A DNA stretch of 64,000 bases from IMG/VR virus record IMGVR_UViG_3300023175_000005, positions 124,001 through 188,000 of that record. One strand, given 5' to 3'. The notes below the pieces were generated by a model. That model saw only the letters and a program-made list of their open reading frames with translations, was not told the DNA's origin and made no database searches. A program made the position numbers and the translations under genes. Below, piece after piece: positions 6,816 through 61,972 of this stretch. Position 1 is the stretch's first letter; each line of letters opens with the position of its first letter.

Positions 6816-6816
6816 C

Positions 6817-8697: not shown

Positions 8698-8702
8698 TTA
8701 GG

Positions 8703-8708
8703 TAAATA
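8703..8708 (+). promoter_or_regulatory. T4-like late promoter motif TAAATA
   Basis: TAAATACAGTG in the short intergenic gap, upstream of the GGGAG RBS of the 8734 gene. Confidence 0.55.
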
Positions 8709-8733
8709 CAGTGCAGAGGGAGTAAGCTCACAA

Positions 8734-25719: not shown

Positions 25720-26891
25720 AAAAAGTAGCAATGATAGGATGCGGCAAATTAGGACAAGATTGTGCCGAAGTAATGGCAACACATTATGATGTTGTAGGTT
25801 ATGATGTTGCAAAGCGGACACCGCGAAACTTTTCTATGTGTCAAACTATAAAAGACGCAGTTACAGATACAAATATAATTTTTGTTGCAGTGCCCACACC
25901 ACACGAAGCACAATATGGAGGCGAGACTCCTACTAGTCATTTGCCTAATAAAGATTTTGACTATAGTATTGTTGAATCTGTGTTACGTAAAATTAACAAG
26001 CATGTAAACAAATCACAGTTAGTTGTGCTTATTAGTACAGTTCTTCCTGGTACAACTAGAAATAGATTTATCAAACTAATAAAAAATGCACGTTTTGTTT
26101 ACAATCCTTACTTAATAGCAATGGGTACAATTAAATGGGACATGGTAAATCCTGAAATGGTTATTATTGGCACTGAAGACGGTAGCACTACAGATGATGC
26201 AAAAGAGTTGATCGACTTTTATAAGCCTATAATGCAAAACAATCCTAGATATGAAATAGGCACATGGGATGAAGCAGAAGCTATAAAAATATTTTACAAT
26301 ACGTTTATCAGTACTAAACTAAGTTTAGTTAATATGATACAAGATGTTGCTGAAACAAGTGGTAATATTAATGTTGATGTTGTTACAGAAGCCCTTGCAA
26401 AAAGCACATACCGAATTATGGGGCCAGGCTATATGCAAGCAGGTATGGGAGACGGAGGCGCATGTCATCCTAGAGATAATATTGCTTTACGATATCTAGC
26501 ACAACGGTTAGACTTAGGTTATGATTTGTTTGATAGTATTATGACTGCAAGAGAAGTACAAGCCAAAAGAATGGCACAGAGATTGATTAGAGAAGGTAAT
26601 GATATTTGTATTGTAGGAAAAGCCTATAAGCCAGGAGTTTATTACACTATAGGCAGTAGTAGTATGCTAGTAGGACATTATGTAGAAGAATTAGGAGGGT
26701 CTCTAACTTATTATGACATCAACACAGGAGATACGGTATTTCCTAAAGCAGATGTATATCTAATAGGTTATTGGGAACAGTATGTAGAAGAAATTGAATG
26801 GCCGCTTGGGTCTACAGTAGTAGATCCTTGGAGGAAACTTAGAGATTCAAACGAATTCAAAGTTGTACATTACGGTAACACACGGAGTTAA
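25716..26891 (+). CDS. UDP-glucose/GDP-mannose 6-dehydrogenase family protein
   Basis: GCGKLG, FVAVPTP, STVLPGT, YNP, EAEAIK..YN and catalytic GGACHPRD; G.AYKP. Confidence 0.85.
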   Translation: MKKVAMIGCGKLGQDCAEVMATHYDVVGYDVAKRTPRNFSMCQTIKDAVTDTNIIFVAVPTPHEAQYGGETPTSHLPNKDFDYSIVESVLRKINKHVNKSQLVVLISTVLPGTTRNRFIKLIKNARFVYNPYLIAMGTIKWDMVNPEMVIIGTEDGSTTDDAKELIDFYKPIMQNNPRYEIGTWDEAEAIKIFYNTFISTKLSLVNMIQDVAETSGNINVDVVTEALAKSTYRIMGPGYMQAGMGDGGACHPRDNIALRYLAQRLDLGYDLFDSIMTAREVQAKRMAQRLIREGNDICIVGKAYKPGVYYTIGSSSMLVGHYVEELGGSLTYYDINTGDTVFPKADVYLIGYWEQYVEEIEWPLGSTVVDPWRKLRDSNEFKVVHYGNTRS

Positions 26892-26898
26892 ATATTGC

Positions 26899-27639
26899 AT
26901 GGAACTAGTAACACATCTTAAAACAACATATCCAAACATTAAAAAATTAAATTATGAATTTGTAGGAACACCGCCATATCCTATGATTACATTAGACAAT
27001 TTTTTGCCAGAATCAATGGCAAAAGCAATGGAACTTGAGTGCGAAAGCATACCAGAATTCCATTGGAAAGAATTTACCCGTCGCGATAGTTATATGCGTG
27101 AACTTACAAATTTAGAGGTAGCACCTGTAGCACAAAATTTTACAAATCAAATGCACAGTCAAGCAGGTATGCAATGGTTGATTAAACTTACTGGTATTAA
27201 GGATCTTATTCCTGATCCTTATATTGTAGGTGCAGGTTATAGTAGAAGTTATCCAGGATGTAAATTATCAATCCATACAGATTTTAACTGGAATGATACA
27301 ATTAAAGTACATCGTATGCTGAGTATGATAATTTATCTAGGATCGGATTGGGAAGAAGAATGGGGCGGCCATTTACATTTCAATGACTTCAACAATAAAG
27401 GTCCTGTACAAAAAGTTGCACCAATGTTTAATAGAGCAATTATTTGGAGACACCATGAAAGAGGGTTCCATGGGTTTCCTGATGCACTAGCATGTCCTGA
27501 AGGGCGTACAAGAAATGCATTTAGATTGTTCTTTTACGTAAGCAATGCAAAACACGATGATGAGAATTTACCTCATCGTAGTTTGTATTGGTTTGATGAA
27601 GAAACAGGCGAACCCTATGATATTACAACTGAAAGATAG
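26899..27639 (+). CDS. Fe(II)/2-oxoglutarate oxygenase (prolyl-hydroxylase-like)
   Basis: HTD...IIYL..DW.EEWGG.L...P.FNR......HG......R. ATG 26899 preferred over the upstream alternative start. Confidence 0.8.
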   Translation: MELVTHLKTTYPNIKKLNYEFVGTPPYPMITLDNFLPESMAKAMELECESIPEFHWKEFTRRDSYMRELTNLEVAPVAQNFTNQMHSQAGMQWLIKLTGIKDLIPDPYIVGAGYSRSYPGCKLSIHTDFNWNDTIKVHRMLSMIIYLGSDWEEEWGGHLHFNDFNNKGPVQKVAPMFNRAIIWRHHERGFHGFPDALACPEGRTRNAFRLFFYVSNAKHDDENLPHRSLYWFDEETGEPYDITTER

Positions 27640-28267
27640 AACTGTAGAGTTAAACGATCCTTGGGATGCAGTCACAGTATTTGAAGATAGACTAGCAGAA
27701 TATGCTGGATCTAAATATGCAGTATGTGTTGATAGTTGTAGTAATTCAATGTTTCTTTGTATGAAATACTTAGGCGTAACAGGTCAAACAATTACATTGC
27801 CTGCACATACATATTCAAGCACACCAATGCAGTGTATTCACGCAGGTAATAAAATTAAATTTATTGATAAAGAATGGAGTGGTGATTATTTTTTAGATCC
27901 TACTCCTATTGTTGACGGAGCAACTAGATTCCGTAAAGGAATGTATATACCTGAGTCATATTATTGTGTAAGTTTTCATCATAGAAAAACACTTAAATTA
28001 GGTAAAGGTGGAGTAATACTAACAGATGACATAGACTTTGTAGAATGGTGCCGTCCTATGATTTATGATGGGCGCCACAAATATGTTAGACATGAAGATG
28101 ACGATTATAGTTGTATAGGCTATCATATGTATATGACTCCAGAAGAAGCCATAAGAGGTATTACACTCTTTGAAGAATTAGGACCAGATAATCCTGATAC
28201 AGGTTCTAGTACAACATACAAAGATTTACGAAAACAGAAAGTATTTGACGAGTATAGAGATGAGTAA
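27617..28267 (+). CDS. Short DegT/DnrJ/EryC1/StrS-family PLP aminotransferase
   Basis: FE..LAEY.GSKYAV.V.SC, P..TY, VDGA and SFHHRKTLKLGKGG.I.TDD with the PLP Lys. Only ~216 aa. Confidence 0.75.
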   Translation: MILQLKDRTVELNDPWDAVTVFEDRLAEYAGSKYAVCVDSCSNSMFLCMKYLGVTGQTITLPAHTYSSTPMQCIHAGNKIKFIDKEWSGDYFLDPTPIVDGATRFRKGMYIPESYYCVSFHHRKTLKLGKGGVILTDDIDFVEWCRPMIYDGRHKYVRHEDDDYSCIGYHMYMTPEEAIRGITLFEELGPDNPDTGSSTTYKDLRKQKVFDEYRDE

Positions 28268-29303
28268 AATAAACGCAAACACAGAATGGGGCACACTTAA
28301 AGAAGTAATTTTAGGTAATGCAGAGTGGGCTCAAGTTCCTAGGATCAAAAACAAAGATATACATTGTGTTGACTATGCTAACATAGATGATTTATCCGAC
28401 ATGCCGGGCGGGCAATATCCAGAAGATGTTATTAACGAAACTATAGAAGACTTAAACGTGTTTCAAAAACAACTTGAAGACATTGGTGTAAAAGTCATGC
28501 GTCCTACAAAGTTTAATCATGGAGTTACACACATGTCTCCTGATTGGTCTACTGATGCATACTATAGTTATTGTCCACGTGATAGTGTGCTTACTATTGG
28601 TGATATGCTTATCGAAACTCCTATGCCTCTTAGAAGTAGATATTTTGAAACATTTGGTATGAGAAGTATTTTCAAAGAGTATTTTGTAAACGGCAGTAGA
28701 TGGATTGCAGCACCTAAGCCTAGATTACCAGATAAACTTTATGATAGATCAGATCTAAATGCTCCTACACTTACTGAATATGAACCAGCATTTGATGCTG
28801 CTAACTGTGTAAAGATAGGTAAAGATATATTATATCTTGTTTCAAACAGCGGAAACAAAATGGGCGCACGGTGGCTACAAAGTACACTTGGTGAAAAGTA
28901 TACAGTGCATATGTTAGAAAACGTGTATGCATATGTACATTTAGATACTAGTATTATGCCATTGGCACCTGGTAAAGTATTATTAAATTCTGAAAGAGTA
29001 AAAGAAGAACAACTACCTGACATATTCAACAAGTGGGAAAAAATATGGGCACCTGAACCACATGAAACACAGGTTATGCATGATTGGGCACCTGCAAGTC
29101 CTTGGCTAGGAATGAATATTTTAAGTTTAAGTGAATCTTTAGTTGCCGTTGAAGAAAATCAACATAGTTTAACAAAAACTTTAGAAAATTCAGGCTTTGA
29201 TGTTATGCACGTAAAGATGAGACATTGTCGAACACTAAGCGGCGGCCCCCATTGTGTTACACTTGATACAGTTAGAGAGGATGAATATGCAGACTATCGA
29301 TAA
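28260..29303 (+). CDS. Amidinotransferase (glycine/inosamine-phosphate amidinotransferase family)
   Basis: EWG.LKEVI.G, CPRD, R.FE, FDAAN (Asp), HLDT (His) and GGPHCVTLD (Cys): full catalytic triad. Confidence 0.9.
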   Translation: MSKINANTEWGTLKEVILGNAEWAQVPRIKNKDIHCVDYANIDDLSDMPGGQYPEDVINETIEDLNVFQKQLEDIGVKVMRPTKFNHGVTHMSPDWSTDAYYSYCPRDSVLTIGDMLIETPMPLRSRYFETFGMRSIFKEYFVNGSRWIAAPKPRLPDKLYDRSDLNAPTLTEYEPAFDAANCVKIGKDILYLVSNSGNKMGARWLQSTLGEKYTVHMLENVYAYVHLDTSIMPLAPGKVLLNSERVKEEQLPDIFNKWEKIWAPEPHETQVMHDWAPASPWLGMNILSLSESLVAVEENQHSLTKTLENSGFDVMHVKMRHCRTLSGGPHCVTLDTVREDEYADYR

Positions 29304-30177
29304 AGCAATTATTGGCTTAGGTTGTAGTTGGACACAGGGCGAAGGCGGCTATACAGAAGAAACATGGAAGAAACACAACGGAAAGATGAATTTTCCTATG
29401 GATCAAAGCACAGACCTTATTCCTATGGAATGGGAAAACAGTTGGGTTAATGTATTAGCAAGGGATCATTTTACGGATTATACAGCAGTTAATTTAGGTC
29501 AGCGAGGTATAGGTAACAGAGCAGCAGCAAGGTGTTTGTACTTGACAGATATAGATTGGGATGCAATGGAAGATTGCATTATTGTGTTTATGCTAAGTGG
29601 ATACGAACGTTTTGATTTTTTTAGACAAGACATGCATTTTGACGAAGAGCCGCATTTTACAAGACACAGAGAACACCCTTATAAACGTGCTCATCATTAT
29701 AACTTTAATACTGTATGGCCTAATGATAGTGACAAGTTTTGGAAAGCATATACAAGAACTTGTTGGAGCGAAACATGTGCAAGTATGGAAACTCTATGTA
29801 GTATTTTAGAAGTGCAAAATTTTTGTAAGGCCTATGGATTTAAATTTGTTCTTGCAAATGCATTTGATTATAGAGGAAAACATGATTTAGAAACAAGAAC
29901 AGGCGGTTTGCACGATCAAATAGATTGGACAAAGTATATACACGATTATAGACATTATGATCAATTTGTAGATTTGCTAGTAGAAGCAGATGATTGGTTA
30001 CAAGGTGAACATGAAAGATCACAATGGTGGGATAGATATCATAATTTAGATTATCCTAAACAGTTTCTAACAAATGATATTCATCCAAATATCAATGGCT
30101 ACAAGTTAATGGCAAAAGAACTTGCAGAATTTATTACAGAAACATATGGCTTGACAACTGCAAAAAATCCTGTATAA
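29287..30177 (+). CDS. SGNH/GDSL-like hydrolase or acyltransferase
   Basis: GCSWTQG, NLG.RG.GN and DIHPN..GY..MA. Start chosen from the GAGAGG RBS. Confidence 0.6.
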   Translation: MQTIDKAIIGLGCSWTQGEGGYTEETWKKHNGKMNFPMDQSTDLIPMEWENSWVNVLARDHFTDYTAVNLGQRGIGNRAAARCLYLTDIDWDAMEDCIIVFMLSGYERFDFFRQDMHFDEEPHFTRHREHPYKRAHHYNFNTVWPNDSDKFWKAYTRTCWSETCASMETLCSILEVQNFCKAYGFKFVLANAFDYRGKHDLETRTGGLHDQIDWTKYIHDYRHYDQFVDLLVEADDWLQGEHERSQWWDRYHNLDYPKQFLTNDIHPNINGYKLMAKELAEFITETYGLTTAKNPV

Positions 30178-30178
30178 T
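30151..30178 (+). promoter_or_regulatory. Sigma70-type promoter TTGACA-16 bp-TATAAT
   Basis: Perfect -35 (30151-30156) and -10 (30173-30178) upstream of the AAGGA RBS and ATG 30197. Confidence 0.7.
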
Positions 30179-30196
30179 TTATAAAAAGGATTTCGT

Positions 30197-31720
30197 ATGA
30201 GCGATTATAATCAGTCTGCAGATATTGCAGAAAAGCAGTTAAAGAATATCAGCAAGACAATGTGTTATGCAAAATGGACACAGGTTTCTATGCATCTTAC
30301 AAATGGTAAAACGCATAGTTGCTATCATCCGCCATTGCATGATATGGATGTTGATGCTGTAAAAGCAAATCCTAAAGCCTTACATAATACTGCACAAAAG
30401 AAAGAAGAACGTGCAATGATGCTCAAAGGCGAGCGTCCTGCAGGTTGTGCATATTGCTGGAAGATTGAAGACGTAGGAGGTCGCAGTGATAGAATATACC
30501 GTTCCGGAGAGTATTGGGCACAGAATAGTAGAAGTGATATTATTGATGCACTAGATACAGGTGACGTAGATCCACGTTATATGGAAGTTAATTTTAACCA
30601 AGCATGTAATTTTTCTTGTATGTATTGTTCTCCACATTTAAGCACAACATGGGAAGAAAAAATCAAAGAACATGGCGAATTTAAAATACTAGATGCAGAG
30701 GGCAAGGAAACAGGACATAACAATCTAGAGTATTTGCAAGAAAAAGGACTTATGCCTTTGAAAGTACGGCAAAGCGAAAATCCTTATCTTGAAGCTTTTT
30801 GGAAATGGTGGCCTAGTTTATATAACAAACTAGAAGTATTTCGTATTACAGGCGGCGAGCCGTTAATGGACATCAACACATTTCGTGTACTTGAATATAT
30901 CTATGAAAATCCAAACACATGGCTTGAATTAAGTATTACAACAAACATGTGTCCTCCTAAAGAAGAACTTATGGATAGATTCTTATCTAAAGTAAAAAAA
31001 CTTGAAGAGATACAAATTTGGGAAGATAAAAATCGTTGGAATCCAGGTAGCGGAAACAACTGGTATGTTAACATGGCATTGAAAAACTTTGCGTTGTTTA
31101 TTTCAGTTGACAGCGTAGGCTCACAAGCAGAATACATACGTGGCGGATTAAAGTGGGATACAATGACACGTAATACTATGCGTTTTCTAACAGAAACAAA
31201 AAATACAACTGTTACATTTATTAATACTTTTAATGCTTTGTCTGTGCCAAAAGTAAAAGACTATTTAGAATACGTGTTAAAATTAAGACAGCGTTTTAGT
31301 GCAAGTAATCAAGGTGTGCAATATATTCCTATACACGACCCTTACACTAAACACGATGATTATGAAATACATCCTCGTCAGCGTATTTGGTTTGATATAC
31401 CTCTAATTAGATATCCTGACTGGCAAACTATTCAAATTTTAACACCAGACTTTGACAAGTATCTTGAAGAAGCAATTGACTTTATGAAACAAAATAGCAA
31501 TGTAAGCGATTTTGCAGGATTCTATGATTTTGAAATTGCAAAACTAGAACGCAATCTTGCTATAATGCGTGAACGTGTTGACATTAATCAAAACAAAATA
31601 GAATTAGATAGAAAAAACTTTGCAAGGTTTTTTGATCAGTATGACGAAAGGAACTTCTTAAAATTTGTAGAAGTGTTTCCTGAAATGGAAGATTTCTACA
31701 AGTTATGTAAAACTCTATAA
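30197..31720 (+). CDS. Radical SAM protein with N-terminal twitch-like domain; close paralogue of 15973
   Basis: CNFSCMYC and TGGEPLM. Shares C.AKW, THSCYHP, ALHNT..KK.ERA.ML.GE.P.GC.YCW and NPY..A.WKWWP. Confidence 0.85.
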   Translation: MSDYNQSADIAEKQLKNISKTMCYAKWTQVSMHLTNGKTHSCYHPPLHDMDVDAVKANPKALHNTAQKKEERAMMLKGERPAGCAYCWKIEDVGGRSDRIYRSGEYWAQNSRSDIIDALDTGDVDPRYMEVNFNQACNFSCMYCSPHLSTTWEEKIKEHGEFKILDAEGKETGHNNLEYLQEKGLMPLKVRQSENPYLEAFWKWWPSLYNKLEVFRITGGEPLMDINTFRVLEYIYENPNTWLELSITTNMCPPKEELMDRFLSKVKKLEEIQIWEDKNRWNPGSGNNWYVNMALKNFALFISVDSVGSQAEYIRGGLKWDTMTRNTMRFLTETKNTTVTFINTFNALSVPKVKDYLEYVLKLRQRFSASNQGVQYIPIHDPYTKHDDYEIHPRQRIWFDIPLIRYPDWQTIQILTPDFDKYLEEAIDFMKQNSNVSDFAGFYDFEIAKLERNLAIMRERVDINQNKIELDRKNFARFFDQYDERNFLKFVEVFPEMEDFYKLCKTL

Positions 31721-34284
31721 TGTATGACATCTTTTTTATTGGTGTAAAAAATGACACTTATGAATATCTAAAAGCAAATTTTGTTACAGCAAAATATGCA
31801 CCTAATTTTTTAACTGCCCAAAGTCAATCCTTAACAGACTTTTTTTGGGTAGTTCCTGATGATGTAAGTATAGTAGAAAATTTTACATTTGACTATGAGC
31901 CTGATGATTGGAGCAAGAATTACAACCATGTGTTTCTTAATGACACCAAATATGACGGTGTGTGTTTGATTCCTAAAGATAATGAAATTACTCTAGACGA
32001 AATTGAAAAAAGATGTTATAATAAACAAAAACAAGTAGAATTACAAGTTAGCGTACCAAAACCGTATGATAAGTTTTATATTGAAACATACGATGATTAT
32101 AAAGACGCACTGGAGTCGTCAAACACTGCAATGTTTTGGGCATTGTCATACAACTTAGAATTAAAGGAAGACTTTGACTTTGATTTACATTTTGCACATG
32201 ATAACATATATGACAAAGAAACAAATCATGTGTTCGTTCACGAAGTAAATGGACAAAAGTTATACAATGGAGTAGCACTGTTGACAAAAGCAAGAATTTT
32301 AACAAAAAAAGAAATTGAACATCGTTTTATTGTAAACAGAAAAGAATGGAACATTGTAGCAAGTGGACCTGTAAAATATAATAAATTTGTAATTGATAGT
32401 TGGGAAGACTATCAATATGCACTTGAAAATTCAAATACAGAAATGTTTTGGGGAACAAGTGTTAATATCGATACAAGCGGGTTTGCATTTGATACTTATT
32501 TTACACATGACAATGAATATGATAGAAAAACAAATCATGCATTTATACATCGTGTAGATGATAATGATTTATACAATGGTGTATTTTTATTTTCAAAACA
32601 TGCACCAGTATCGCAAAGAGAAATTGAGCATAGATTTATTGTAAATCACAAACCATGGGATGTAGTGGCAAGTAAACCTATACAATATGATAAGTTTCCT
32701 ATAGACAGTTATCAAGACTATGTAACAGCATTAAATTCAAGCACAACAGAAATGTTTTGGGGTATTCCTAAAGATGTAGACGTTGCTGATGATTTTAAAT
32801 TTGATCTATACTTTGAACATTCTAATACATATGACCGCAGTGTTAATCATGCATTTTTAAATAATGATACATATGACGGCATTATGCTTTTTAGTAAGCA
32901 GTCGCCGGTATCACAACGTGAAGTTGATTATAGATTCTATGCAAACAAAAAAGAATGGGACATTGTAGCAAGTACACCTAAACCGTTTGATGTGTTTAAT
33001 ATTGATACGTATGAACAATATCTACAAGCCTTAGACAATACAACAACAGAATTATTCTGGTTTAGTACAAATAATATTGCACTTGATGAAAAGTTTGTTA
33101 ATAGTTTTTATATCAGTCATCATGAGCAAATTGATAGAAAACAAAATCATAGTTTTGTACATAAAGTAGAAGATAAAGACTTGCGTACTGGTGCATATCT
33201 ATGTAGTATCCATAAACCTGTAAGTAAAAAAGAAATAGAACACAGGCATCTAGTAGAGCGTAAAGAATGGAATAATGTTGCTAGTGGACCTGCACAATAC
33301 GATAGATTTAATGTTGAGTCTTGGGAAGATTATTTACGTGCAGTTAAGATGAGTAAAACTGAATTATTTTATGCAGATGATCCTAATATTGATACAAGCA
33401 AGTTTAGATTTAATATGTATTTTGATCATGCAAACACATATGACAGAAAACAAAACCATGCATTTGTACACAAAGATGGCTCTGAAACAGGTTACAATGG
33501 ATTGTTTTTGTTGTCTAAACAATCTCCTATTACCAAAAAAGAAATTGAACACAGATTTGTTGTTAATCACAAGCCTTGGAATATTATGGCAAGTGAATAC
33601 AAAATTTATGATGTTGTGTTTATTTCATATCAAGAACCTAATGCAGACGAAAATTATGAACTACTGCTAGAACGTGTACCAAATGCAAAACGTGTACATG
33701 GAGTAAAAGGTATTCACCAAGCACATATCGAAGCAGCAAAACTTTGCGAAACTGAAATGTTTTGGATTGTTGACGGTGACGCACAAATTGTAGATGATTT
33801 TAGTTTTGAATATCGTGTTCCACGTTGGGACAGAGACATGGTGCATGTATGGCGTACACAAAACCCAATTAATGATCTAGTATATGGTTATGGCGGACTA
33901 AAACTGTTTCCAAGAATGTTAACTATTAATATGGATACAAGTAAGCCTGACATGACAACAAGTATTACAAACAAATTCAAGGCTGTCCAACAAATATCAA
34001 ACTTAACTTGTTTTAATACAGGACCTTTTGAAACATGGAAGTCAGCATTTAGAGAATGCTGTAAACTTTCATCAGGTGTTATTGACAGACAAAAAGACTT
34101 AGAAACACAAGAGCGTTTGGATATTTGGTGTACAAAAGGTGTAGATAAACCATATGGTGAATATGCTATAGCAGGTGCAAAAGCAGGCGCAGCATATGGT
34201 AAAGAAAATGCAACTAATATTGCTGCACTAAAACTTATTAATGACTTTGATTGGCTAAAGGATAAGTTCAATGCAGACACATGA
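31720..34284 (+). CDS. Repeat-containing glycosyltransferase-like protein: degenerate GT-A repeats plus C-terminal GT-A domain
   Basis: C-terminal DVVFISYQEPNA..N...RVHGVKG...FWIVDGD...YGYGGLK...W.SAFREC.K is homologous to 15035, preceded by five ~100-104 aa repeats. Confidence 0.65.
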   Translation: MYDIFFIGVKNDTYEYLKANFVTAKYAPNFLTAQSQSLTDFFWVVPDDVSIVENFTFDYEPDDWSKNYNHVFLNDTKYDGVCLIPKDNEITLDEIEKRCYNKQKQVELQVSVPKPYDKFYIETYDDYKDALESSNTAMFWALSYNLELKEDFDFDLHFAHDNIYDKETNHVFVHEVNGQKLYNGVALLTKARILTKKEIEHRFIVNRKEWNIVASGPVKYNKFVIDSWEDYQYALENSNTEMFWGTSVNIDTSGFAFDTYFTHDNEYDRKTNHAFIHRVDDNDLYNGVFLFSKHAPVSQREIEHRFIVNHKPWDVVASKPIQYDKFPIDSYQDYVTALNSSTTEMFWGIPKDVDVADDFKFDLYFEHSNTYDRSVNHAFLNNDTYDGIMLFSKQSPVSQREVDYRFYANKKEWDIVASTPKPFDVFNIDTYEQYLQALDNTTTELFWFSTNNIALDEKFVNSFYISHHEQIDRKQNHSFVHKVEDKDLRTGAYLCSIHKPVSKKEIEHRHLVERKEWNNVASGPAQYDRFNVESWEDYLRAVKMSKTELFYADDPNIDTSKFRFNMYFDHANTYDRKQNHAFVHKDGSETGYNGLFLLSKQSPITKKEIEHRFVVNHKPWNIMASEYKIYDVVFISYQEPNADENYELLLERVPNAKRVHGVKGIHQAHIEAAKLCETEMFWIVDGDAQIVDDFSFEYRVPRWDRDMVHVWRTQNPINDLVYGYGGLKLFPRMLTINMDTSKPDMTTSITNKFKAVQQISNLTCFNTGPFETWKSAFRECCKLSSGVIDRQKDLETQERLDIWCTKGVDKPYGEYAIAGAKAGAAYGKENATNIAALKLINDFDWLKDKFNADT
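32065..33606 (+). repeat. Five tandem intragenic repeats of 300-312 bp
   Basis: Units start at about 32065, 32377, 32686, 32986 and 33298. Consensus YD.F.I.(S/T)(Y/W).DY..AL..S.TEMFW......F.FD.YF.H.N.YDR..NH.F.....YNG..L.SK..P....EIEHRF..N.K.W...AS.P. Confidence 0.9.
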
Positions 34285-35179
34285 GTTACTTGATAGATTT
34301 GAATTGATGTATCCTAGAGATACTAGATTAAGTGATTTACGTAGAGCATATATTGACAAAGATATGAGTAGTATCTTTAGACTACTTCCTACTGTTATAC
34401 GTGGAAGTACAGATGATTTGCGTAAAGTAATGATGGAAAATAATTTACACAGTTTGTTTAGACTTGCAGAAGATGAAGAATTGCGTAAGTTATTATTAGA
34501 AAACAATACATATAAACTTTGGCCAGTATTGAAAAGATTTAAAGATACAAGATTTATTGATGCGTTTAAAAATCTACAAATAAACAATATTGAATACGAT
34601 ACAGATTGTTTTAGTAGAGGACAACTTGAAAGTAAACTTTGGTTAGTACAAGAATTACAAAGACAAAAAATTGATTTAGGCACAGTATTTCTTTGTGCAG
34701 GATGGTACGCTACACTTGCTACAATGTTATTTGAAAGTAACATTAAGTTGGATAAAGTTAGATCTTTTGACGTTGATCCTACTTGCGCAAACATTGCTGA
34801 AGTTTTCAATAAGCCTTGGGTAAAAGAAGAATGGCAGTTTAAAGCCTGTACACAAGATATTATGGAAATACAATGGGATGGGCATAGTTATCCTGTAAAT
34901 AGAAGTGATGGTAGTGTTTGTATGCTTTATGATACACCAGATACAATTATTAATACTAGTTGCGAACATATAGAAAACTTTGCAAAATGGTATGATTCAA
35001 TACCAGAAGGTAAATTAGTTGTACTACAAAGCAACAACTATTATGAAATTGAAGAACATGTAAATTGTGTAGGAAGTATTGAAGAGTTTGCAGTAAAGGC
35101 ATCTATGAATAATATTTTATATGCAGGTGAATTTGATTTGCCCAAGTATACGAGGTTTATGTTAATTGGATTTAAGTAA
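34271..35179 (+). CDS. Putative class I SAM-dependent methyltransferase
   Basis: GQLESKLWL, VFLCAGWY (degenerate motif I), SFDVD, DTIINTSCEH and RFMLIG. Confidence 0.5.
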   Translation: MQTHELLDRFELMYPRDTRLSDLRRAYIDKDMSSIFRLLPTVIRGSTDDLRKVMMENNLHSLFRLAEDEELRKLLLENNTYKLWPVLKRFKDTRFIDAFKNLQINNIEYDTDCFSRGQLESKLWLVQELQRQKIDLGTVFLCAGWYATLATMLFESNIKLDKVRSFDVDPTCANIAEVFNKPWVKEEWQFKACTQDIMEIQWDGHSYPVNRSDGSVCMLYDTPDTIINTSCEHIENFAKWYDSIPEGKLVVLQSNNYYEIEEHVNCVGSIEEFAVKASMNNILYAGEFDLPKYTRFMLIGFK

Positions 35180-35393
35180 GTTTACAACTAGACAGTTGCA
35201 ATTAGAATGTGCAAGAGCACTGAGCACAATGCAAGCAACTAATAACAACATATGGCAGTTTAACAAAGAAGCACACCATAACAGTTGGAATTGGTATTGT
35301 GCTGTCATACACTGGTATATTGAACAGTATGGTGATTTACCTAGTAAAGTCGGCCCTGGCAAGGATGTGGAGTTAGTTTACGATAATGTATAA
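35166..35393 (+). CDS. Small hypothetical protein (75 aa, Trp/Tyr/His-rich)
   Basis: Exactly fills the gap between two genes, overlapping both; TTG start. Confidence 0.55.
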   Translation: MDLSKFTTRQLQLECARALSTMQATNNNIWQFNKEAHHNSWNWYCAVIHWYIEQYGDLPSKVGPGKDVELVYDNV

Positions 35394-36453
35394 TTATGAA
35401 GATATTAAAACTATTCATTTAGAAGTTACACAAAACTGTCAAGCCAGTTGTCCAATGTGTGATCGAAACATGAATGGTGAAGGAATAAATCCTCATATTA
35501 ACCTTGATGAATTGTACTATGAAGATTGCGTAAAGATATTTGATGCTTCCTTTATAAAACAATTGGATACTATGTACATGTGTGGTAATTTGGGCGATCC
35601 TATTGTTGCACAAGATACACTTGAAATATTCAAATATTTTAGAAAGCATAACCCTAATATGTGGTTAAGCATGAATACAAACGGAGGAGCAAAAAATGAA
35701 GAATGGTGGAGACAACTGGCTGAAGTTTTTGGAAGGATGGGTGCCGTTATATTTAGTGTTGACGGTTTGCGTGACACTAATCATCTATATCGCCAAGGTG
35801 TTGTATGGGATAATGTAGAACGCAATATGAGAGCCTTTATAGACGCAGGTGGCAGGGCACGTTGGGACTATTTGATATTTGAACATAACCAGCATCAAGT
35901 AGAAGAAGCAGAAGCACTTGCTAATGAATGGGGTTGCGAAAAGTTTATGAAGAAAAAGACTGGACGCTTTATTACACAAGATTCAAAAAAGAAAGAATCG
36001 CATCAAGCAGTTGATCGTAAAGGTAAAGAAACTACTGAACTAAAAAAACCTGATGAAAAGTACCAAAACAAAGCTTTAACTAAACAAGATAAAATTATAG
36101 AAAAATACGGAAGTATGGATGCATATTACAATGCTGTTCCTGTAATATGTAAAGTAAAAAAAGAAAACAGTCTGTTTATAACAGCAGAAGGACTTGCGTT
36201 GCCCTGCTGCTGGACTGCTGGACGTATGTACAAATGGTGGCATAAAGATCCTAAAATAGAACAAATATGGGATTTCATTGAAGATAAAACAAAATTAGAT
36301 GCACGTAATGGATTAGAAAAAGTTTTTAAAACAGGTATTTTTGATGCTATACAAAACAGTTGGAATAAGCCGAGTTGTTTTGCAGGTAAATTAAAAGTTT
36401 GTGCTATGAAGTGCGGTGCGGAGTTTGATCCATTTGCGGAGCAATTTAAATGA
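35386..36453 (+). CDS. Radical SAM protein with C-terminal SPASM/twitch domain
   Basis: CQASCPMC, CGNLGDP, NTNG and FSVDG. C-terminal C...G..LPCCW...C...C. Confidence 0.85.
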   Translation: MYNYEDIKTIHLEVTQNCQASCPMCDRNMNGEGINPHINLDELYYEDCVKIFDASFIKQLDTMYMCGNLGDPIVAQDTLEIFKYFRKHNPNMWLSMNTNGGAKNEEWWRQLAEVFGRMGAVIFSVDGLRDTNHLYRQGVVWDNVERNMRAFIDAGGRARWDYLIFEHNQHQVEEAEALANEWGCEKFMKKKTGRFITQDSKKKESHQAVDRKGKETTELKKPDEKYQNKALTKQDKIIEKYGSMDAYYNAVPVICKVKKENSLFITAEGLALPCCWTAGRMYKWWHKDPKIEQIWDFIEDKTKLDARNGLEKVFKTGIFDAIQNSWNKPSCFAGKLKVCAMKCGAEFDPFAEQFK

Positions 36454-37175
36454 TATTATTTAATGGATGCAGTTTTACATACGGCGATGAATTAATAGAT
36501 GCTGAAAATACATGTTTTGCTGCACTTGCAGGAAAAAAATTAAATCAAGATTTTAAAAATTTAGGAACACTCGGCGGCAGTAATCATAGGATTGTTAGAA
36601 CTACATTTGCAAATTTAGATGAAAATATTAAAGCAGCAGTTATACAATGGACATCTCCTACAAGATTTGAACATTTTGTACAAGATAGTTTAGAGACAAA
36701 CGATGGATATAGAAAAGTTACTTTACAAAAATTAGGACCTATAGGTCACCATCATGATAGGACTATATGGAGAATGTTTAATGCAAACCAGTATAGTAAA
36801 ACAAATCTTGCACTTAAAAAATATGCAGTGCAAGTTAGAACTTATAGAGCAAACTGTATAGAATTTTTATATCAAGTACATCAAATTCAAACAGCCTTAA
36901 GATTAGCAGATATACCTTATTTTATGGTAAACGGAATAAAAGAAATACATCAAGATATATTTCCAGATAATTTATCTCATTTAAGAAATAGTTGTCCTGT
37001 ATATAATAAAATTGACTGGAGTGACAAAGTTTGGTTGTTAGATCCAAAAACTGATAGTATAGAAGACTGGACTAAACGTAATAACTATGCTATAGGTAGC
37101 GGCGAGCATCCACTTGAGGAAGCACATGATGCTTTTTCTGATATAATACTACATAGATTGAAAGATAAAATATGA
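36450..37175 (+). CDS. SGNH/GDSL-like protein
   Basis: NGCSFTYG, NLG..GGSN..I.RTT, IQWT...R.E and EHP.E.AH. Confidence 0.6.
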   Translation: MILFNGCSFTYGDELIDAENTCFAALAGKKLNQDFKNLGTLGGSNHRIVRTTFANLDENIKAAVIQWTSPTRFEHFVQDSLETNDGYRKVTLQKLGPIGHHHDRTIWRMFNANQYSKTNLALKKYAVQVRTYRANCIEFLYQVHQIQTALRLADIPYFMVNGIKEIHQDIFPDNLSHLRNSCPVYNKIDWSDKVWLLDPKTDSIEDWTKRNNYAIGSGEHPLEEAHDAFSDIILHRLKDKI

Positions 37176-38170
37176 TAGAGGTACATTCAGAACCGTTTAC
37201 ATACTATACTAAAGAAGAGTTTTTTAATGCTGCGGTATTTTCTTACTTAGATAAAACTTATCCCTACGATAAAATTTATCAATATGCAAAACTCGAAGGT
37301 ACCCATGAAGCAAAAGGTATTGCTGAAAATAATTATGTTTTACCATTAGAAATTGCAGATTATGAAGACGGCATTGATGAAGGAAAACAAAAACAGTTTT
37401 ATCCTGCATTTGACACTATACTTAATGAATTGCCTAAACTAAAAAAAGTAATTTTTGGTAAAGATTTTAATCATGATAGTTTTTATGTAAATTATCATCA
37501 CGACCTTGACGGTAGTTTTATAGAAACGCACAATGATTTAAAAGACTTTAGGTGGTTGGTAACTTGTCAAATTTATTTCGATTACGGTAATCAAGGTGCT
37601 TGGACAGTAGACAAACGCGGAGAAATGCACAGTCAAGTACCTCAAAAACCTAACTTCTTTTATGCTATACCTGCTACTAATTACAGTTGGCATTGTGTAG
37701 ATGACATTGTTGATACCAAAAGATCTATATTATTTAGATTTGCTAAACGCAGACACAGAAGTGTGTTACGACCAAGTAAAAGTAAATTAGCATTTGTTAT
37801 CGATAATACAATTAAACATAGTGATAAGACTTATATTAAAATGAGTATGCGAATGGGCAATCTTACAGAAGCATGGCTTGCCTCAAAAGACTGTGAAAAT
37901 ATTTTCCATACAAAATGGAAAGATGAAGATCAAAAAGAACGATTATTATACCATCTTATAGAAAAAGGTTATGATCCGATTGTTATTCCGTCAGGTTGTT
38001 TTCCTAACAATCCGTTAAGTCCTGAACACGATGAATATAGAGTAATTCAAGAATCAGATGCTCAACAATATGATGATATGGTTTTTAGAAAAGATGATTC
38101 TGATCCTCTGTTTTGTAAAGCAGAAGAAATATTAGAAAAACATAATCCTATGGAATACGAAGACGTATGA
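37172..38170 (+). CDS. Fe(II)/2OG oxygenase-like protein with extra C-terminal domain
   Basis: HND...QIYF...PN......SWH.V......R.S triad pattern. Confidence 0.55.
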   Translation: MIEVHSEPFTYYTKEEFFNAAVFSYLDKTYPYDKIYQYAKLEGTHEAKGIAENNYVLPLEIADYEDGIDEGKQKQFYPAFDTILNELPKLKKVIFGKDFNHDSFYVNYHHDLDGSFIETHNDLKDFRWLVTCQIYFDYGNQGAWTVDKRGEMHSQVPQKPNFFYAIPATNYSWHCVDDIVDTKRSILFRFAKRRHRSVLRPSKSKLAFVIDNTIKHSDKTYIKMSMRMGNLTEAWLASKDCENIFHTKWKDEDQKERLLYHLIEKGYDPIVIPSGCFPNNPLSPEHDEYRVIQESDAQQYDDMVFRKDDSDPLFCKAEEILEKHNPMEYEDV

Positions 38171-39492
38171 TTAAAACACTTGAAGATATGCGAAACGAAT
38201 TAGAAAAGTTAGGATTAAATCCCGATACATTCTGTTTTGCACCTTACATTAACGCTGACTTGGATCAATCCGGTTCTGTATATACATGCTACAGGGGTAG
38301 AGAACGTGTAGGCAATTGGAAGAAACAACCATTTACAAAACTGTTTAACAATGATTATTATAAAAATATTAGGAATGACCTGTATTGCGGACAAAGAAAT
38401 AAAAATTGCGTAAGTTGTTGGAATGCAGAAGATTCTAATAGTAAGTCGCCTAGAATGGATTTTTTTGGAGATTTTGAAAGACAAGTTGAAGATAAAGATG
38501 CACTTATAGATTTTATAAAAAATAATCCAGACGAATCTAGACTTACTGATCTTGAAAGGATAGAAATACGTCCTAGTAATTTATGTAATTTGCAATGTAT
38601 GCACTGCGGCCCAGGCAGTAGTACACTTTGGGTAACAAGTTTAACTGACAAAGAAACTTTTGAAATATATGAAGAAACATCTTACGATGTTGGTAAAGAA
38701 GTTGATGATTTAGATGAATCTGTTACACATAATAATATATCTAAATTATTCAAAGTTGCTCTCAATAGCGAAAGCAGATATAAAGAAGACATAAAAGAAT
38801 TACTCGCATCTGCTTCTATGATTCATTTTACAGGCGGTGAACCGTTACTTACTCCAGAACATATAGACTGGTTAGAATATATGACAAGTAAAAATCCGCA
38901 AGATCAAAAATTAGTCTATAATACAAATCTTAATGTCAAAGACATATCAAAGTATTTAAAGTATTGGATGAAGTTTAAACAAGTAGAAATTGTTTGTAGT
39001 ATAGATGCATCGTTTGACACATATGATTTTTTTAGAATGCGTGGAGATATTGAACTTGTTAAAAGCAATTTACGCAGAATTAAAGATTTCAATTTAAGTA
39101 ACATAATTCTAAAAGGCACTGTAACATTTAACATGTTTAGTGCTTTGCGTTGGACTGATATTTTAAACAATTGGTTAGAGTATGATTTATTATTTCATAC
39201 TAGTCTAGTACTAGATAATCCTGTATCTAGTTTAGAATTACCAGATTCTATTAGACAAAGATGTATAAACGAAATGCAAGACAGTATAGAAAAAGCAAAA
39301 CTGTCGACAAATAATAAAGATTTTATTGATAGGTGGGAATACTTTACAAATGATTGTTTGAATTATATGAAAAATAATTTTAACGGCCAAGAAAAATTAT
39401 CTGAAAGATCTACAAAATATATTAAACTGTGTGAACGTATTAACAATAAAAAAATGTTAGATTATTTTCCTGAACTAGAGGAATATGTTTAG
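38167..39492 (+). CDS. Radical SAM protein with N-terminal twitch domain
   Basis: CNLQCMHC and TGGEPLL. N-terminal CFAP...G.VYTC...C.SCW..E. Confidence 0.85.
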   Translation: MIKTLEDMRNELEKLGLNPDTFCFAPYINADLDQSGSVYTCYRGRERVGNWKKQPFTKLFNNDYYKNIRNDLYCGQRNKNCVSCWNAEDSNSKSPRMDFFGDFERQVEDKDALIDFIKNNPDESRLTDLERIEIRPSNLCNLQCMHCGPGSSTLWVTSLTDKETFEIYEETSYDVGKEVDDLDESVTHNNISKLFKVALNSESRYKEDIKELLASASMIHFTGGEPLLTPEHIDWLEYMTSKNPQDQKLVYNTNLNVKDISKYLKYWMKFKQVEIVCSIDASFDTYDFFRMRGDIELVKSNLRRIKDFNLSNIILKGTVTFNMFSALRWTDILNNWLEYDLLFHTSLVLDNPVSSLELPDSIRQRCINEMQDSIEKAKLSTNNKDFIDRWEYFTNDCLNYMKNNFNGQEKLSERSTKYIKLCERINNKKMLDYFPELEEYV

Positions 39493-40157
39493 TGGATTAC
39501 AGAAAGTTTGAAACATTAGAATTTAGTCCTACAACTTATTGCCAAGCAAAATGTCCTTTATGTCCAAGAACAGAGTTAGATGCAAAGGACAAATTAGTAT
39601 ATAGACATTTTTCCTTAGAAACTTATAAGAAGATGGTAGACACTGCTCCGAGTGCAGTCGAAGTAATTTATTTTTGCGGAGATTATGGAGATCCATTAAT
39701 GCATCCTGATATAGAAGAAATGATAGATTATGGATGTGCTTCAGGTAAAGAAGTTCAAGTAGCAACAAACGGTGGCCTAAGACAGAAAGATTGGTATGTA
39801 AGTATTGCAAAACGTTGGAAAGATCAACTACGTTTGAATTTTGGTATAGATGGTATAACAGCAGAACAGAGTAGTAAATATAGAATTGAGGTAGATTTTA
39901 ACAGAGCGTGGGAACATATGATTGCTGCAAATGAATCAGGTGCTGTAGTATGTTGGGATTTTTTAGTGTTTACATTTAATTATAGAAGTGTACCCGAAGC
40001 TATTGAATTAGCAAGGAAAAATAAATTAGAAATGGATATAAAATTAAATACTAGAGATTGGAAGTATAAAATTGTAGACAAAGAAATGAAAGAACAAGTT
40101 TTTGCTTGGGCAAATAAAGTCAGCGAATGGAAATGGTATGACAAAGATAAAGTGTAG
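39492..40157 (+). CDS. Radical SAM core domain lacking its SPASM/twitch domain
   Basis: CQAKCPLC, CGDYGDP.MHP, TNGG, GIDG and YR. Paralogue of 35386, 41793 and 62685 but ends early; GTG start. Confidence 0.8.
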   Translation: MDYRKFETLEFSPTTYCQAKCPLCPRTELDAKDKLVYRHFSLETYKKMVDTAPSAVEVIYFCGDYGDPLMHPDIEEMIDYGCASGKEVQVATNGGLRQKDWYVSIAKRWKDQLRLNFGIDGITAEQSSKYRIEVDFNRAWEHMIAANESGAVVCWDFLVFTFNYRSVPEAIELARKNKLEMDIKLNTRDWKYKIVDKEMKEQVFAWANKVSEWKWYDKDKV

Positions 40158-40416
40158 GACAAAAGGTATTGTTATAGACACTGACGGACATGCATGGCCC
40201 TGTTGCTGGACACTTACTGAGCCAAGCATGTCTCCTTATCTAAAAAGTTTAGATAAAGACTGGAATTCTATTGCAAAAAATGGATTAGATGCTATAATAG
40301 ATAGTGAAGCATTCAGTAAACATTTTAACACTGAAGGTTGGGAAACAGATCCTGATCCTATATGCAAAAAATTTTGTAAAGCGATAAACAATGAATACAA
40401 AACACACAAAGATTAG
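40138..40416 (+). CDS. Stand-alone SPASM/twitch Fe-S domain protein
   Basis: MTKIKC...IDTDGHAWPCCW...NSI...L..I....F......C.KFC. ATG at 40138 overlaps the upstream gene end. Confidence 0.75.
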   Translation: MTKIKCRTKGIVIDTDGHAWPCCWTLTEPSMSPYLKSLDKDWNSIAKNGLDAIIDSEAFSKHFNTEGWETDPDPICKKFCKAINNEYKTHKD

Positions 40417-43993: not shown

Positions 43994-43996
43994 TAT
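43968..43996 (+). promoter_or_regulatory. Sigma70-type promoter TTGACA-17 bp-TAGTAT with extended -10 TG
   Basis: -35 at 43968-43973, TGn at 43988-43990 and -10 at 43991-43996. Followed by GGAG RBS and TTG 44020. Confidence 0.6.
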
Positions 43997-44019
43997 AGTA
44001 CTAATAATGGAGAACTATA

Positions 44020-57703: not shown

Positions 57704-57720
57704 CAATAACGAGATATTTT

Positions 57721-58719: not shown

Positions 58720-58721
58720 AC

Positions 58722-61953: not shown

Positions 61954-61972
61954 TTAGTGTATAGGAGAAGGT

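What the first reader, a model, noticed from the sequence alone, without database searches (positions are those of the whole stretch)
31720..34284. Glycosyltransferase with five tandem degenerate copies of its own catalytic core
Seen: each ~103 aa repeat aligns with the C-terminal domain segment A....TEMFW.VDGD....F.F......D....H......Y.G..L. The DxD is lost in the repeats (FWALSYN, FWGTSVN, FWGIPKD, FWFSTNN, FYADDPN), and the N-terminal unit has VPDD. Inference: non-catalytic pseudo-GT modules act as acceptor-binding arms, a chain-length ruler or a scaffold. Repeat number could vary between strains.
Basis: partly seen in the sequence, partly recalled or inferred. Interest (0 to 1): 0.6.

Follow-up and report, generated by a model that had tools for sequence, protein, structure and literature searches.

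The report
Phage glycosyltransferase with pseudo-domain repeat arm
A giant salt-marsh phage encodes a sugar-transferring enzyme whose active domain is preceded by six inactive, conserved copies of part of itself; relatives carry 0 to 16 internal copies, an enzyme architecture I found described nowhere.

Summary
Window 31720..34284 (+) is one 854-aa ORF with three parts. An N-terminal unit (aa 1-112) is followed by five internal repeats of 100-104 aa (aa 113-627) and a 227-aa C-terminal domain.

Profile comparison shows all units are homologous to the first ~110 residues of the C-terminal domain (E 2e-10 to 3e-30). That domain matches no Pfam, NCBIfam, PHROG or PDB sequence. Its model (pLDDT 90) has a GT-A / nucleotide-diphospho-sugar transferase fold (Z 10-12) with an invariant DxD (D685-G-D687).

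A two-repeat model (pLDDT 96) finds only the same fold class, at moderate Z (4.3-6.9). The units lack the DxD and nearly all other polar residues invariant in the catalytic domain. They are still under purifying selection (dN/dS 0.06-0.18, against 0.008 for the catalytic domain).

In 272 homologues the plan is always N-unit, then 0-16 repeats, then one terminal catalytic domain. The family is mainly viral, and bacterial relatives lack the repeats. The gene is translationally coupled to a radical-SAM gene upstream and a probable methyltransferase downstream. It sits in a large sugar/radical-SAM cluster beside tail-fibre genes.

What the array does (arm, spacer or ruler) remains inference.

The parts
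31720..34284 (+). Whole ORF (P0001, 854 aa): N-unit + 5 internal repeats + catalytic GT-A-like domain
   Evidence: the start ATG shares one base with the stop of the upstream ORF (TAATG)
31720..32055 (+). N-type pseudo-unit (aa 1-112). It keeps the beta1-alpha1-beta2 segment of the catalytic domain. The DxD position reads P-D-D here and W-D-D in the family consensus.
   Evidence: hhalign N vs C 99.7%, E 2.4e-26; N HMM 142.7 bits; column table
32056..32367 (+). Internal repeat R1 (aa 113-216)
   Evidence: model m32e2e0ed0501
32368..32676 (+). Internal repeat R2 (aa 217-319)
32677..32976 (+). Internal repeat R3 (aa 320-419)
32977..33288 (+). Internal repeat R4 (aa 420-523)
33289..33600 (+). Internal repeat R5 (aa 524-627). 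It is the positional orthologue of the last repeat in P0128 and P0148.
33601..34014 (+). Catalytic-type GT-A core (aa 628-765)
   Evidence: model pLDDT 90.3; Foldseek gives 35 PDB hits at E<=1e-3, nearly all GT-A glycosyltransferases; VIA-align Z 10-12, rmsd 2.6-3.1 over ~136 aa
33772..33780 (+). DxD motif codons (D685-G686-D687)
   Evidence: D58 and D60 of the domain are invariant in A2 and in 100 family members
34015..34281 (+). C-terminal helical subdomain (aa 766-854, four to five helices). It has no fold match of its own.
   Evidence: secondary structure; fold matches mostly cover model residues 1-138 only
30197..31720 (+). Upstream radical-SAM-like gene (507 aa), translationally coupled to the GT gene
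   Evidence: Pfam/PHROG; one-base overlap; upstream of all 5-repeat relatives; rSAM-to-C-domain fusions in bacteria
34271..35179 (+). Downstream partner gene (302 aa), a probable class I SAM methyltransferase, overlapping the GT stop by 14 nt
   Evidence: immediately downstream in 71 of 80 loci, with 4 more at contig edges; Atlas features nearest Methyltransf_31, 0.95, a lead only; overlap
15035..15976 (+). Single-domain paralogue of the catalytic domain (313 aa, 39% identity, DxD kept), followed by a radical-SAM gene at 15973..17355

Best explanation
P0001 is most likely a soluble, phage-encoded GT-A-fold, DxD-type glycosyltransferase. It belongs to an uncharacterised and mostly viral family. 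Its single catalytic domain sits at the C-terminus.

In front of that domain lie six non-catalytic modules: one N-type and five R-type. They arose by partial internal duplication of the nucleotide-binding half of the same domain. The R-type then lost the alpha1-beta2 segment. The likely evolutionary path is C alone, then N-C, then N-R(n)-C.

Shown here: the homology, the fold class, the loss of catalytic-domain invariants, purifying selection on the array, a fixed architecture with 0-16 repeats, and the gene context.

Inferred: the modules stack with a fixed neighbour-to-neighbour geometry into an elongated arm. Its length is tuned by gain and loss of repeats. The arm docks or spaces the catalytic head relative to a large substrate or to partner enzymes. 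The enzyme works in a pathway with the coupled radical-SAM enzyme and the methyltransferase-like protein. The pathway builds or attaches an unusual glycan, most plausibly on a protein such as a virion or tail-fibre component.
For: Homology: hhalign R/C E 2e-10, N/C E 2e-26, R/N E 3e-30, with reciprocal HMM hits.

Fold of the catalytic domain: the model has pLDDT 90. Foldseek PDB hits are GT-A glycosyltransferases such as WrtF, RmlT, ppGalNAc-T, TarP and PBCV-1 A64R. VIA-align gives Z 12.0, rmsd 2.7 over 136 aa to B4GALNT1. BFVD remote hits are viral glycosyltransferases.

Fold of the repeats: the two-repeat model has pLDDT 96.4 and pTM 0.87. All 50 top chains out of 48,161 are GT-A or NDP-sugar-transferase fold, each aligned to one whole repeat of ~100 aa at rmsd ~3.

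Geometry: an independent ESM model of an 861-aa relative superposes on both repeats at TM 0.85, rmsd 2.4.

Catalytic residues: D58, D60, E12, K30, R31, H33, G37-H39, H42, N88, N91 and K101 are invariant in the C-domain but absent from the repeats.

Selection: dN/dS is 0.06-0.10 for R1-R5, 0.18 for the N-unit and 0.008 for the C-domain.

Architecture: 271 of 272 proteins follow N-R(0-16)-C with one terminal C-domain. 12 of 121 proteins carry a repeat pair at >=90% identity, which indicates recent duplication.

Context:
- Sugar-nucleotide enzymes and at least 17 radical-SAM genes lie in the window.
- Tail-fibre-like genes lie at 4746..10197.
- The partner gene is downstream in 71 of 80 loci.
- Bacterial homologues sit among GT2 and GT4 genes and occur fused to radical SAM, TPR and GT9 domains.
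- A second array gene in this genome lies in a tail-fibre operon next to an Anp1/GT62-like glycosyltransferase.
- Exact pieces of the gene occur in metatranscriptome assemblies.
Against: - No sequence-family match exists and there is no biochemical evidence. Donor, acceptor and product are unknown.
- The same fold search also finds nucleotidyltransferases (MobA-like 2e8b Z 11.1, IspD Z 10.6).
- The repeat's Z scores of 4.3-6.9 lie in the range the tool warns can be generic. Foldseek found nothing significant for the repeats.
- The Atlas whole-protein model has pTM 0.34, so a rigid rod is not shown.
- The stand-alone 224-aa form is common, so the arm is dispensable for the basic activity.
- No binding partner or acceptor was identified.
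Confidence: 0.6

Rival explanations
1. The array is a chain-length ruler. The distance from an anchoring or terminating site to the catalytic head, set by repeat number, fixes the length of a polysaccharide product. The coiled-coil rulers of O-antigen systems work this way.
For: Architecture is quantised, with 0-16 modules. Neighbour geometry appears fixed. Repeat number changes between close relatives. Ruler precedents are in PMC11231755.
Against: No polymerase-type glycosyltransferase, terminator, ABC transporter or membrane anchor was seen next to the gene. The protein has one catalytic domain and no obvious membrane segment. Bacterial relatives are fused to TPR, a protein-binding module, rather than to ruler elements.
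Confidence: 0.12
2. The protein is mainly a structural or receptor-binding virion component. The repeats build a fibre-like stalk, and the GT-like head binds host glycans rather than catalysing transfer.
For: The paralogue P0242 lies in a tail-fibre operon. Tail-fibre-like genes precede the cluster. Variable repeat number is typical of host-range proteins. The own-lineage P0242 has lost the head yet is conserved in 5 related contigs.
Against: The DxD and about 30 other polar positions are invariant, with dN/dS 0.008, which is unlike a fast-evolving receptor binder. Stand-alone bacterial homologues sit in glycosyltransferase clusters. The gene is coupled to enzymes.
Confidence: 0.1
3. The C-terminal domain is not a glycosyltransferase but another enzyme of the same fold, such as a sugar-phosphate nucleotidyltransferase or a phosphosugar transferase.
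For: MobA-like and IspD chains score Z 10-11 in the same search. No GT Pfam model matches.
Against: The stretch after beta1 reads S-Y-x-E-P-N-A rather than the glycine-rich GxGxR loop of nucleotidyltransferases (own knowledge). A DxD follows the central strand. Foldseek's significant hits are nearly all glycosyltransferases. The bacterial context and fusions involve glycosyltransferases.
Confidence: 0.08
4. The repeats are functionless by-products of slippage or unequal recombination that are merely tolerated.
For: Repeat number is very plastic. Recent duplications exist. Forms with no repeats are common.
Against: dN/dS is 0.06-0.10 over the repeats. Repeats within P0001 are old (37-57% identical), and each has closer orthologues in other proteins. 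Conserved polar motifs such as N-H-x-F-x-H and E-I-E-H-R are kept across the family.
Confidence: 0.04

Closest known systems
Collagen galactosyltransferase GLT25D1/ColGalT1 (and the accessory GT-A-like domain of lysyl hydroxylase LH3)
   Same: A catalytic GT-A domain is preceded in the same chain by a non-catalytic GT-A-like domain (PMC12987934). LH3 and the LH3/ColGalT1 complex appear among the fold matches.
   Different: Those proteins have one accessory lobe, which still binds UDP-galactose. Here there are 6 accessory units (up to 17 in relatives). The units are truncated to ~100 aa and lack the nucleotide-binding invariants. Copy number is variable.
Chlorovirus PBCV-1 A064R (GT-GT-methyltransferase) and other multi-GT viral proteins
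   Same: Both are virus-encoded GT-A enzymes that build the virus's own glycan together with a methyltransferase (PMC9614988). A64R domain 1 is a fold match.
   Different: All three A064R domains are catalytically active and unrelated to each other. Here only one domain looks active, the others are degenerate self-copies, and the methyltransferase-like protein is a separate, coupled gene.
Repeat arms and rulers attached to glycosyltransferases: the TPR superhelix of O-GlcNAc transferase (own knowledge) and coiled-coil rulers of O-antigen enzymes (PMC11231755)
   Same: An elongated non-catalytic element is attached to a glycosyltransferase and positions the substrate or sets a distance. Bacterial members of this family are themselves fused to TPR arrays.
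   Different: The arm here is made of alpha/beta pseudo-enzyme modules derived from the enzyme itself, not of TPR or coiled coil. This is a functional analogy only and is untested.
Glycocin S-glycosyltransferases SunS/ThuS and radical-SAM/SPASM peptide maturases
   Same: SunS and ThuS are good fold matches (Z 9.8-10.4; Z 6.3 for a repeat). The family is genetically coupled or fused to radical-SAM/SPASM enzymes, as in peptide-modifying systems.
   Different: There is no sequence similarity and no precursor peptide was identified. The context also contains sugar-nucleotide enzymes.
Mycobacteriophage virion glycosyltransferases (Che8-type)
   Same: Both are phage-encoded GT-A enzymes (BFVD hit Q855A2). 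That they glycosylate virion proteins is stated from own knowledge.
   Different: The match is at fold level only (E 5e-4, 9% identity). Those enzymes have no repeat array.

Membership tests
GT-A fold glycosyltransferase superfamily | Single Rossmann-like alpha/beta/alpha domain with a central mixed sheet | tested here: met
   C-domain model at pLDDT 90. Z 12.0, rmsd 2.7 over 136 aa to B4GALNT1, and Z 10-11 to WrtF, STIV A197 and a Leptospira glycosyltransferase. 35 Foldseek hits at E<=1e-3.
GT-A fold glycosyltransferase superfamily | DxD metal/nucleotide-sugar motif after the central strand | tested here: met
   D685-G-D687. Both Asp residues are invariant in 100 family members, including bacterial ones.
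GT-A fold glycosyltransferase superfamily | Sugar transfer from an activated donor | not testable with these tools
   Needs an enzyme assay.
CAZy GT2 / Pfam Glycos_transf_2 (PF00535) or any other curated GT sequence family | Significant match to the family profile | tested here: not met
   No Pfam hit even at E<=10. No NCBIfam, PHROG or PDB profile hit. Bacterial members also have no hit. The nearest named Atlas cluster is GT2 at 0.86, a lead only.
Sugar-phosphate nucleotidyltransferases (IspD/MobA/RmlA-like) | Glycine-rich GxGxR-type loop after beta1 (own knowledge) | tested here: not met
   The stretch after beta1 is F-I-S-Y-Q-E-P-N-A-D. S9 and E12 are invariant there instead. The fold similarity itself is met.
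Non-catalytic GT-A-like accessory domains (GLT25D1 N-lobe / LH3 accessory type) | GT-A-like fold next to a catalytic GT-A domain in the same chain, without catalytic residues | tested here: met
   All 50 best chains for the repeat model have this fold, Z 4.3-6.9. Homology to the catalytic domain is shown. The DxD and other invariants are lost.
Non-catalytic GT-A-like accessory domains (GLT25D1 N-lobe / LH3 accessory type) | Retained nucleotide-sugar binding | tested here: inconclusive
   The alpha1-beta2 segment, E12, K30, R31, H33 and the DxD are absent from the internal repeats. Binding therefore looks unlikely, but it was not measured.
Coiled-coil molecular rulers of glycan assembly | Extended coiled coil separating two catalytic or terminating modules | tested here: not met
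   The repeats are alpha/beta modules. There is only one catalytic domain per protein.

The most novel reading that the evidence does not exclude
The pseudo-GT-A array is a new kind of length-tunable, rigid arm built from dead copies of the enzyme itself. Repeat number (0-16) sets how far the catalytic head reaches along a giant periodic substrate, such as the >3,000-aa tail fibre encoded next to the paralogous locus. Unequal recombination between repeats would then let jumbo phages rapidly retune the glycosylation pattern of their virions.
Probability: 0.2. Interest if true: 0.8.

Novelty: new variant of a known kind. Interest (0 to 1): 0.63.

Why it matters
Glycosyltransferases with one inactive GT-A-like accessory lobe are known. 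A tandem array of 6 to 17 inactive, selected, self-derived modules in front of a single active domain appears in none of the libraries or papers I searched. UniProt members are labelled 'Uncharacterized protein', and JGI labels some 'CYTH domain-containing'.

The family is abundant, with thousands of sequences in marine, salt-marsh and other metagenomes. It is concentrated in jumbo phages, inside very large radical-SAM and sugar gene clusters next to tail-fibre genes.

If the array proves to be a spacing or docking arm, it would be a clean natural experiment in how pseudo-enzyme domains are recycled as architecture. It would also give a handle on the still unknown glycans that these phages make.

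Tried and rejected
- **Sequence-family scans.** Pfam, NCBIfam and PHROGs on the whole protein, single units and the C-domain gave nothing meaningful. The 22.8-bit aldose-epimerase match is far below its 251-bit cut-off.
- **PDB sequence and profile searches** gave nothing.
- **Megablast against cultured phages** gave nothing. tblastn found only Ralstonia phage RsoM2USA, which has no repeats.
- **Tandem Repeats Finder** found no DNA array. The repeats are too diverged for it, but the repeat finder does see them.
- **Foldseek on the repeat pair** gave no significant hit.
- **Complex prediction** on the C-domain with the downstream 302-aa protein returned no verdict (score 0.00). This is not evidence either way.
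- **Tail-fibre length against repeat number.** Fibre frames are 3,257-3,594+ aa. Several are cut by contig ends and repeat counts are only 4-6, so no usable comparison was possible.
- **Read/contig laying for repeat-number variants.** The 'skips' seen in the seawater run have short sides (20-38 nt) at 90% likeness. They are not multiples of the ~309-nt period. They most likely come from related phages, so they are inconclusive.
- **Literature searches** for tandem, inactive or pseudo glycosyltransferase domains and for jumbo-phage radical-SAM/GT clusters found no description of this family. In the literature 'pseudoglycosyltransferase' means something else (VldE/ValL).


Full report
**What is there.** Window 31720..34284 (+) is a single 854-aa ORF, P0001. 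Its ATG shares one base with the stop of the upstream radical-SAM-like ORF (TAATG). Its last 14 nt overlap the start of the next ORF. Every large ORF in the window lies on the + strand, and G+C is about 33%.

The window is bases 124001-188000 of a 256,558-bp IMG/VR virus record. CheckV rates that record 72% complete, which implies a jumbo phage of roughly 350 kb. Runs holding the gene are salt-marsh metagenomes plus one seawater metagenome.

**The repeats.** Anchor motifs define seven units:
- N-unit, aa 1-112.
- R1 113-216, R2 217-319, R3 320-419, R4 420-523 and R5 524-627.
- C-terminal domain, aa 628-854.

The DNA shows five copies at 300-312 nt spacing with 62-72% identity. That is too diverged for Tandem Repeats Finder.

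I built family alignments of 120 repeats, 78 N-units and 100 C-domains and compared them by hhalign:
- Repeat vs C-domain: probability 96.8%, E 2.2e-10, covering C-domain positions 43-110.
- N-unit vs C-domain: 99.7%, E 2.4e-26, covering positions 2-110.
- Repeat vs N-unit: 99.8%, E 3.3e-30.

The units are therefore true homologues of the first ~110 residues of the C-terminal domain. The internal repeats are closest to the N-unit and lack its alpha1-beta2 segment.

**What the C-terminal domain is.** No curated sequence family matches it:
- Pfam, even at E<=10.
- NCBIfam and PHROGs.
- PDB by sequence or by profile.

An AlphaFold2 model built with 31 homologues has pLDDT 90.3. Foldseek against the PDB returns 35 hits at E<=1e-3. 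Nearly all are GT-A glycosyltransferases, including WrtF, RmlT, ppGalNAc-transferases, TarP and PBCV-1 A64R.

VIA-align places residues 1-138 on GT-A / nucleotide-diphospho-sugar transferase folds at Z 10-12. The best is B4GALNT1 at Z 12.0, rmsd 2.7 over 136 residues. Some nucleotidyltransferases also score Z 10-11. Remote matches in BFVD are viral glycosyltransferases.

The family keeps an invariant D-x-D (D685, D687) after the central strand. It also keeps an invariant S-Y-x-E after beta1 instead of a nucleotidyltransferase glycine loop. I therefore read it as a GT-A glycosyltransferase of a family not yet curated. Activity, donor and acceptor are all unshown. Residues 766-854 form a helical subdomain with no match of its own.

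**What the repeats are structurally.** A model of R1-R2 built with 72 repeat pairs has pLDDT 96.4 and pTM 0.87. Each repeat runs strand-helix-strand, then several strands, a short helix and a long final strand. That final strand leads straight into the next unit.

Foldseek finds nothing significant, although its top list is GT-A/nucleotidyltransferase-like. In an exhaustive VIA-align search of 48,161 chains, all 50 best chains belong to the same fold class. They include B4GALNT1 6.9, WrtF 6.3, SunS 6.3, STIV A197 6.1 and SpsA 5.9. Each aligns to one whole repeat of ~100 residues at rmsd about 3.

The Z values are modest, and the tool warns about that range. What convinces me is the uniformity of the list, its overlap with the C-domain's best chains, and the sequence homology. 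An ESM model of an 861-aa relative superposes on both repeats at TM 0.85, which suggests a fixed neighbour geometry. The Atlas whole-protein model has pTM 0.34, so the global shape is open.

**Are the units inactive but functional?** The C-domain has many invariant residues in the aligned region: D4, S9, E12, K30, R31, H33, G37-I-H39, A41, H42, D58, D60, A61, H82, W84, N88, P89, N91, Y95-G99, K101, L102 and P104.

The internal repeats keep mainly core residues: A45, T51, M53, W55, F67, F69, H82, F84, Y97, G99 and L102. D58 becomes S or P, D60 becomes N (55%) or D (22%), K101 becomes F, and residues 1-42 are missing. N-units keep D60 (83%) but have W at position 58. Catalysis by the units is therefore unlikely.

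They are nonetheless constrained. Against two strains whose flanks are ~94% identical at DNA level, Nei-Gojobori dN/dS is 0.06-0.10 for R1-R5, 0.18 for the N-unit and 0.008 for the C-domain.

**Family and repeat number.** The word search found 3,834 relatives of the C-domain and 1,541 of the full protein. Longer relatives reach 2,010 aa.

In the 272 sequences retrieved, every protein but one follows the same plan: one N-unit, then 0-16 internal repeats, then exactly one C-domain at the very end. Some relatives are the C-domain alone, at about 224 aa.

IMG/VR loci show 0-5 repeats. Repeat number differs between proteins whose C-domains are ~90% identical, for example 1 vs 2 and 1 vs 4. Five near-identical strains all carry five repeats.

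Within P0001 the repeats are old, at 37-57% identity to each other. Each has a closer counterpart in other proteins (59-75%), and R5 matches the last repeat of two relatives. In 12 of 121 proteins a repeat pair is >=90% identical, so duplication is ongoing elsewhere in the family.

A profile search of 1.84 billion cluster representatives found only 120 clusters with the repeat. Among those of 400 aa or more, most end in a C-domain. The few that do not are mostly short and may be fragments. Atlas and BFVD label members as uncharacterised viral proteins.

**Context.** The homologue of ORF 34271..35179 lies immediately downstream in 71 of 80 loci, whatever the repeat number. That ORF is 302 aa and has no Pfam hit. 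Its nearest named Atlas cluster is Methyltransf_31 at 0.95, which is a lead only. The upstream gene varies between loci. All 5-repeat relatives have the same radical-SAM gene there.

The window contains:
- Tail-fibre-like ORFs at 4746..10197.
- An NAD-dependent epimerase/dehydratase, a UDP-glucose/GDP-mannose dehydrogenase, a DegT aminotransferase and a 2OG-Fe(II) oxygenase.
- At least 17 radical-SAM ORFs.
- A 313-aa single-domain paralogue at 15035..15976, itself followed by a radical-SAM gene.

Ralstonia jumbo phage RsoM2USA carries the compact core without repeats: 313-type GT, radical SAM, 226-type GT, methyltransferase-like.

Cellular genomes also hold the C-domain family. These include Bdellovibrionota (one on a 2.9-Mb chromosome), Streptomyces isolates, Dyadobacter and Methylocystis. 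There it is a stand-alone ~235-aa protein without repeats, sitting among GT2 and GT4 genes. It also occurs fused as radical-SAM-SPASM + C-domain, C-domain + TPR + radical SAM, C-domain + TPR + GT9-like, and C-domain + GT2_4.

The radical-SAM link is thus supported by gene fusion. The TPR fusions hint at a protein acceptor.

**A second array in the same genome.** Outside the window, at G000:C1:61586..64111 (-), lies P0242 (842 aa). It has a degenerate leading unit, an N-unit and six repeats, but no catalytic domain.

It is the last gene of an operon: a long tail fibre, a 132-aa protein, a 203-aa Anp1/GT62-like glycosyltransferase (Pfam 34.5 bits against a cut-off of 28.8), then P0242. A convergent NUDIX gene follows. 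Syntenic orthologues in related phages do end in a catalytic domain. Only this phage's own lineage, five contigs in all, has lost it.

This ties the family to tail-fibre genes. It also shows that the array can persist without its own catalytic head.

**Expression.** Metatranscriptome assemblies from salt marsh contain exact pieces across the gene, including pieces spanning both gene junctions. Contigs from RNA libraries cannot prove transcription or a single transcript.

**Interpretation.** Four things are shown:
- A GT-A-fold, DxD-bearing domain is preceded by six homologous, catalytically stripped, selected modules.
- The family architecture is fixed, with a highly variable repeat number.
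- The gene is coupled to radical-SAM and methyltransferase-like genes.
- It lies in a sugar/radical-SAM cluster beside tail-fibre genes.

It is inferred that the array forms an elongated arm that docks or spaces the catalytic head relative to a large substrate or to partner enzymes. A virion or tail-fibre protein is the most plausible target. The rivals are a chain-length ruler, a structural virion role, another enzyme of the same fold, or neutral repeats. They are weighed in the corresponding fields.

**Compared with known systems.** The nearest known case is the non-catalytic GT-A lobe of GLT25D1 and LH3. The present case differs in copy number, in truncation of the units, in their variability and in their viral setting. 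I found no description of it in the paper library.

Noticed in passing
window 15973..63620: At least 17 radical-SAM ORFs lie within about 48 kb of a phage genome, three of them with B12-binding domains (21650, 51751, 55251). In four ORFs (38167, 40391, 45059, 49441) the SPASM match lies N-terminal to the radical-SAM core, the reverse of the usual order.
   Followed up: partly
G000:C1:61586..64111 (-) = L087:7586-10111 (-), outside the window: A second array protein, P0242 (842 aa), has eight pseudo-units and no catalytic domain. It sits in a tail-fibre operon directly after a 203-aa Anp1/GT62-like glycosyltransferase. Syntenic orthologues in related phages still carry the catalytic domain.
   Followed up: yes
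window 15035..15976 and 15973..17355: A single-domain paralogue (313 aa, DxD kept) of the catalytic domain is followed by a radical-SAM gene. The same pair of GT types lies adjacent in RsoM2USA and in many bacterial loci.
   Followed up: partly
L125, L129, L122, L149 (bacterial loci): Bacterial members of the catalytic-domain family occur fused to TPR arrays, radical SAM(-SPASM), a GT9-like domain plus DUF6165, or Glyco_tranf_2_4.
   Followed up: partly
L087:11376-17624 (-) and relatives: The tail-fibre gene next to the P0242 locus is very long. Open frames reach 3,257-3,594+ aa in related contigs and 3,377 aa in the sister contig. The ORF listed in this genome is 2,082 aa from its first ATG. 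I did not resolve the difference.
   Followed up: no
window 34271..35179: A 302-aa ORF with no Pfam hit is almost always directly downstream of the GT gene (71 of 80 loci). Its motifs and Atlas neighbours suggest a class I SAM methyltransferase.
   Followed up: partly
proteins P0122, P0130, P0148 and others: JGI names several family members 'CYTH domain-containing protein' or 'predicted transcriptional regulator'. Nothing found here supports those names.
   Followed up: no
window 30900..35300: Salt-marsh metatranscriptome assemblies hold exact fragments of the GT gene and both of its junctions. A seawater metagenome holds the gene as well, together with diverged relatives.
   Followed up: partly
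window 36450..37175: A DUF6071-family ORF and the unknown ORF next to it (37172..38170) have homologues only in the five near-identical strains among the 80 related loci.
   Followed up: no
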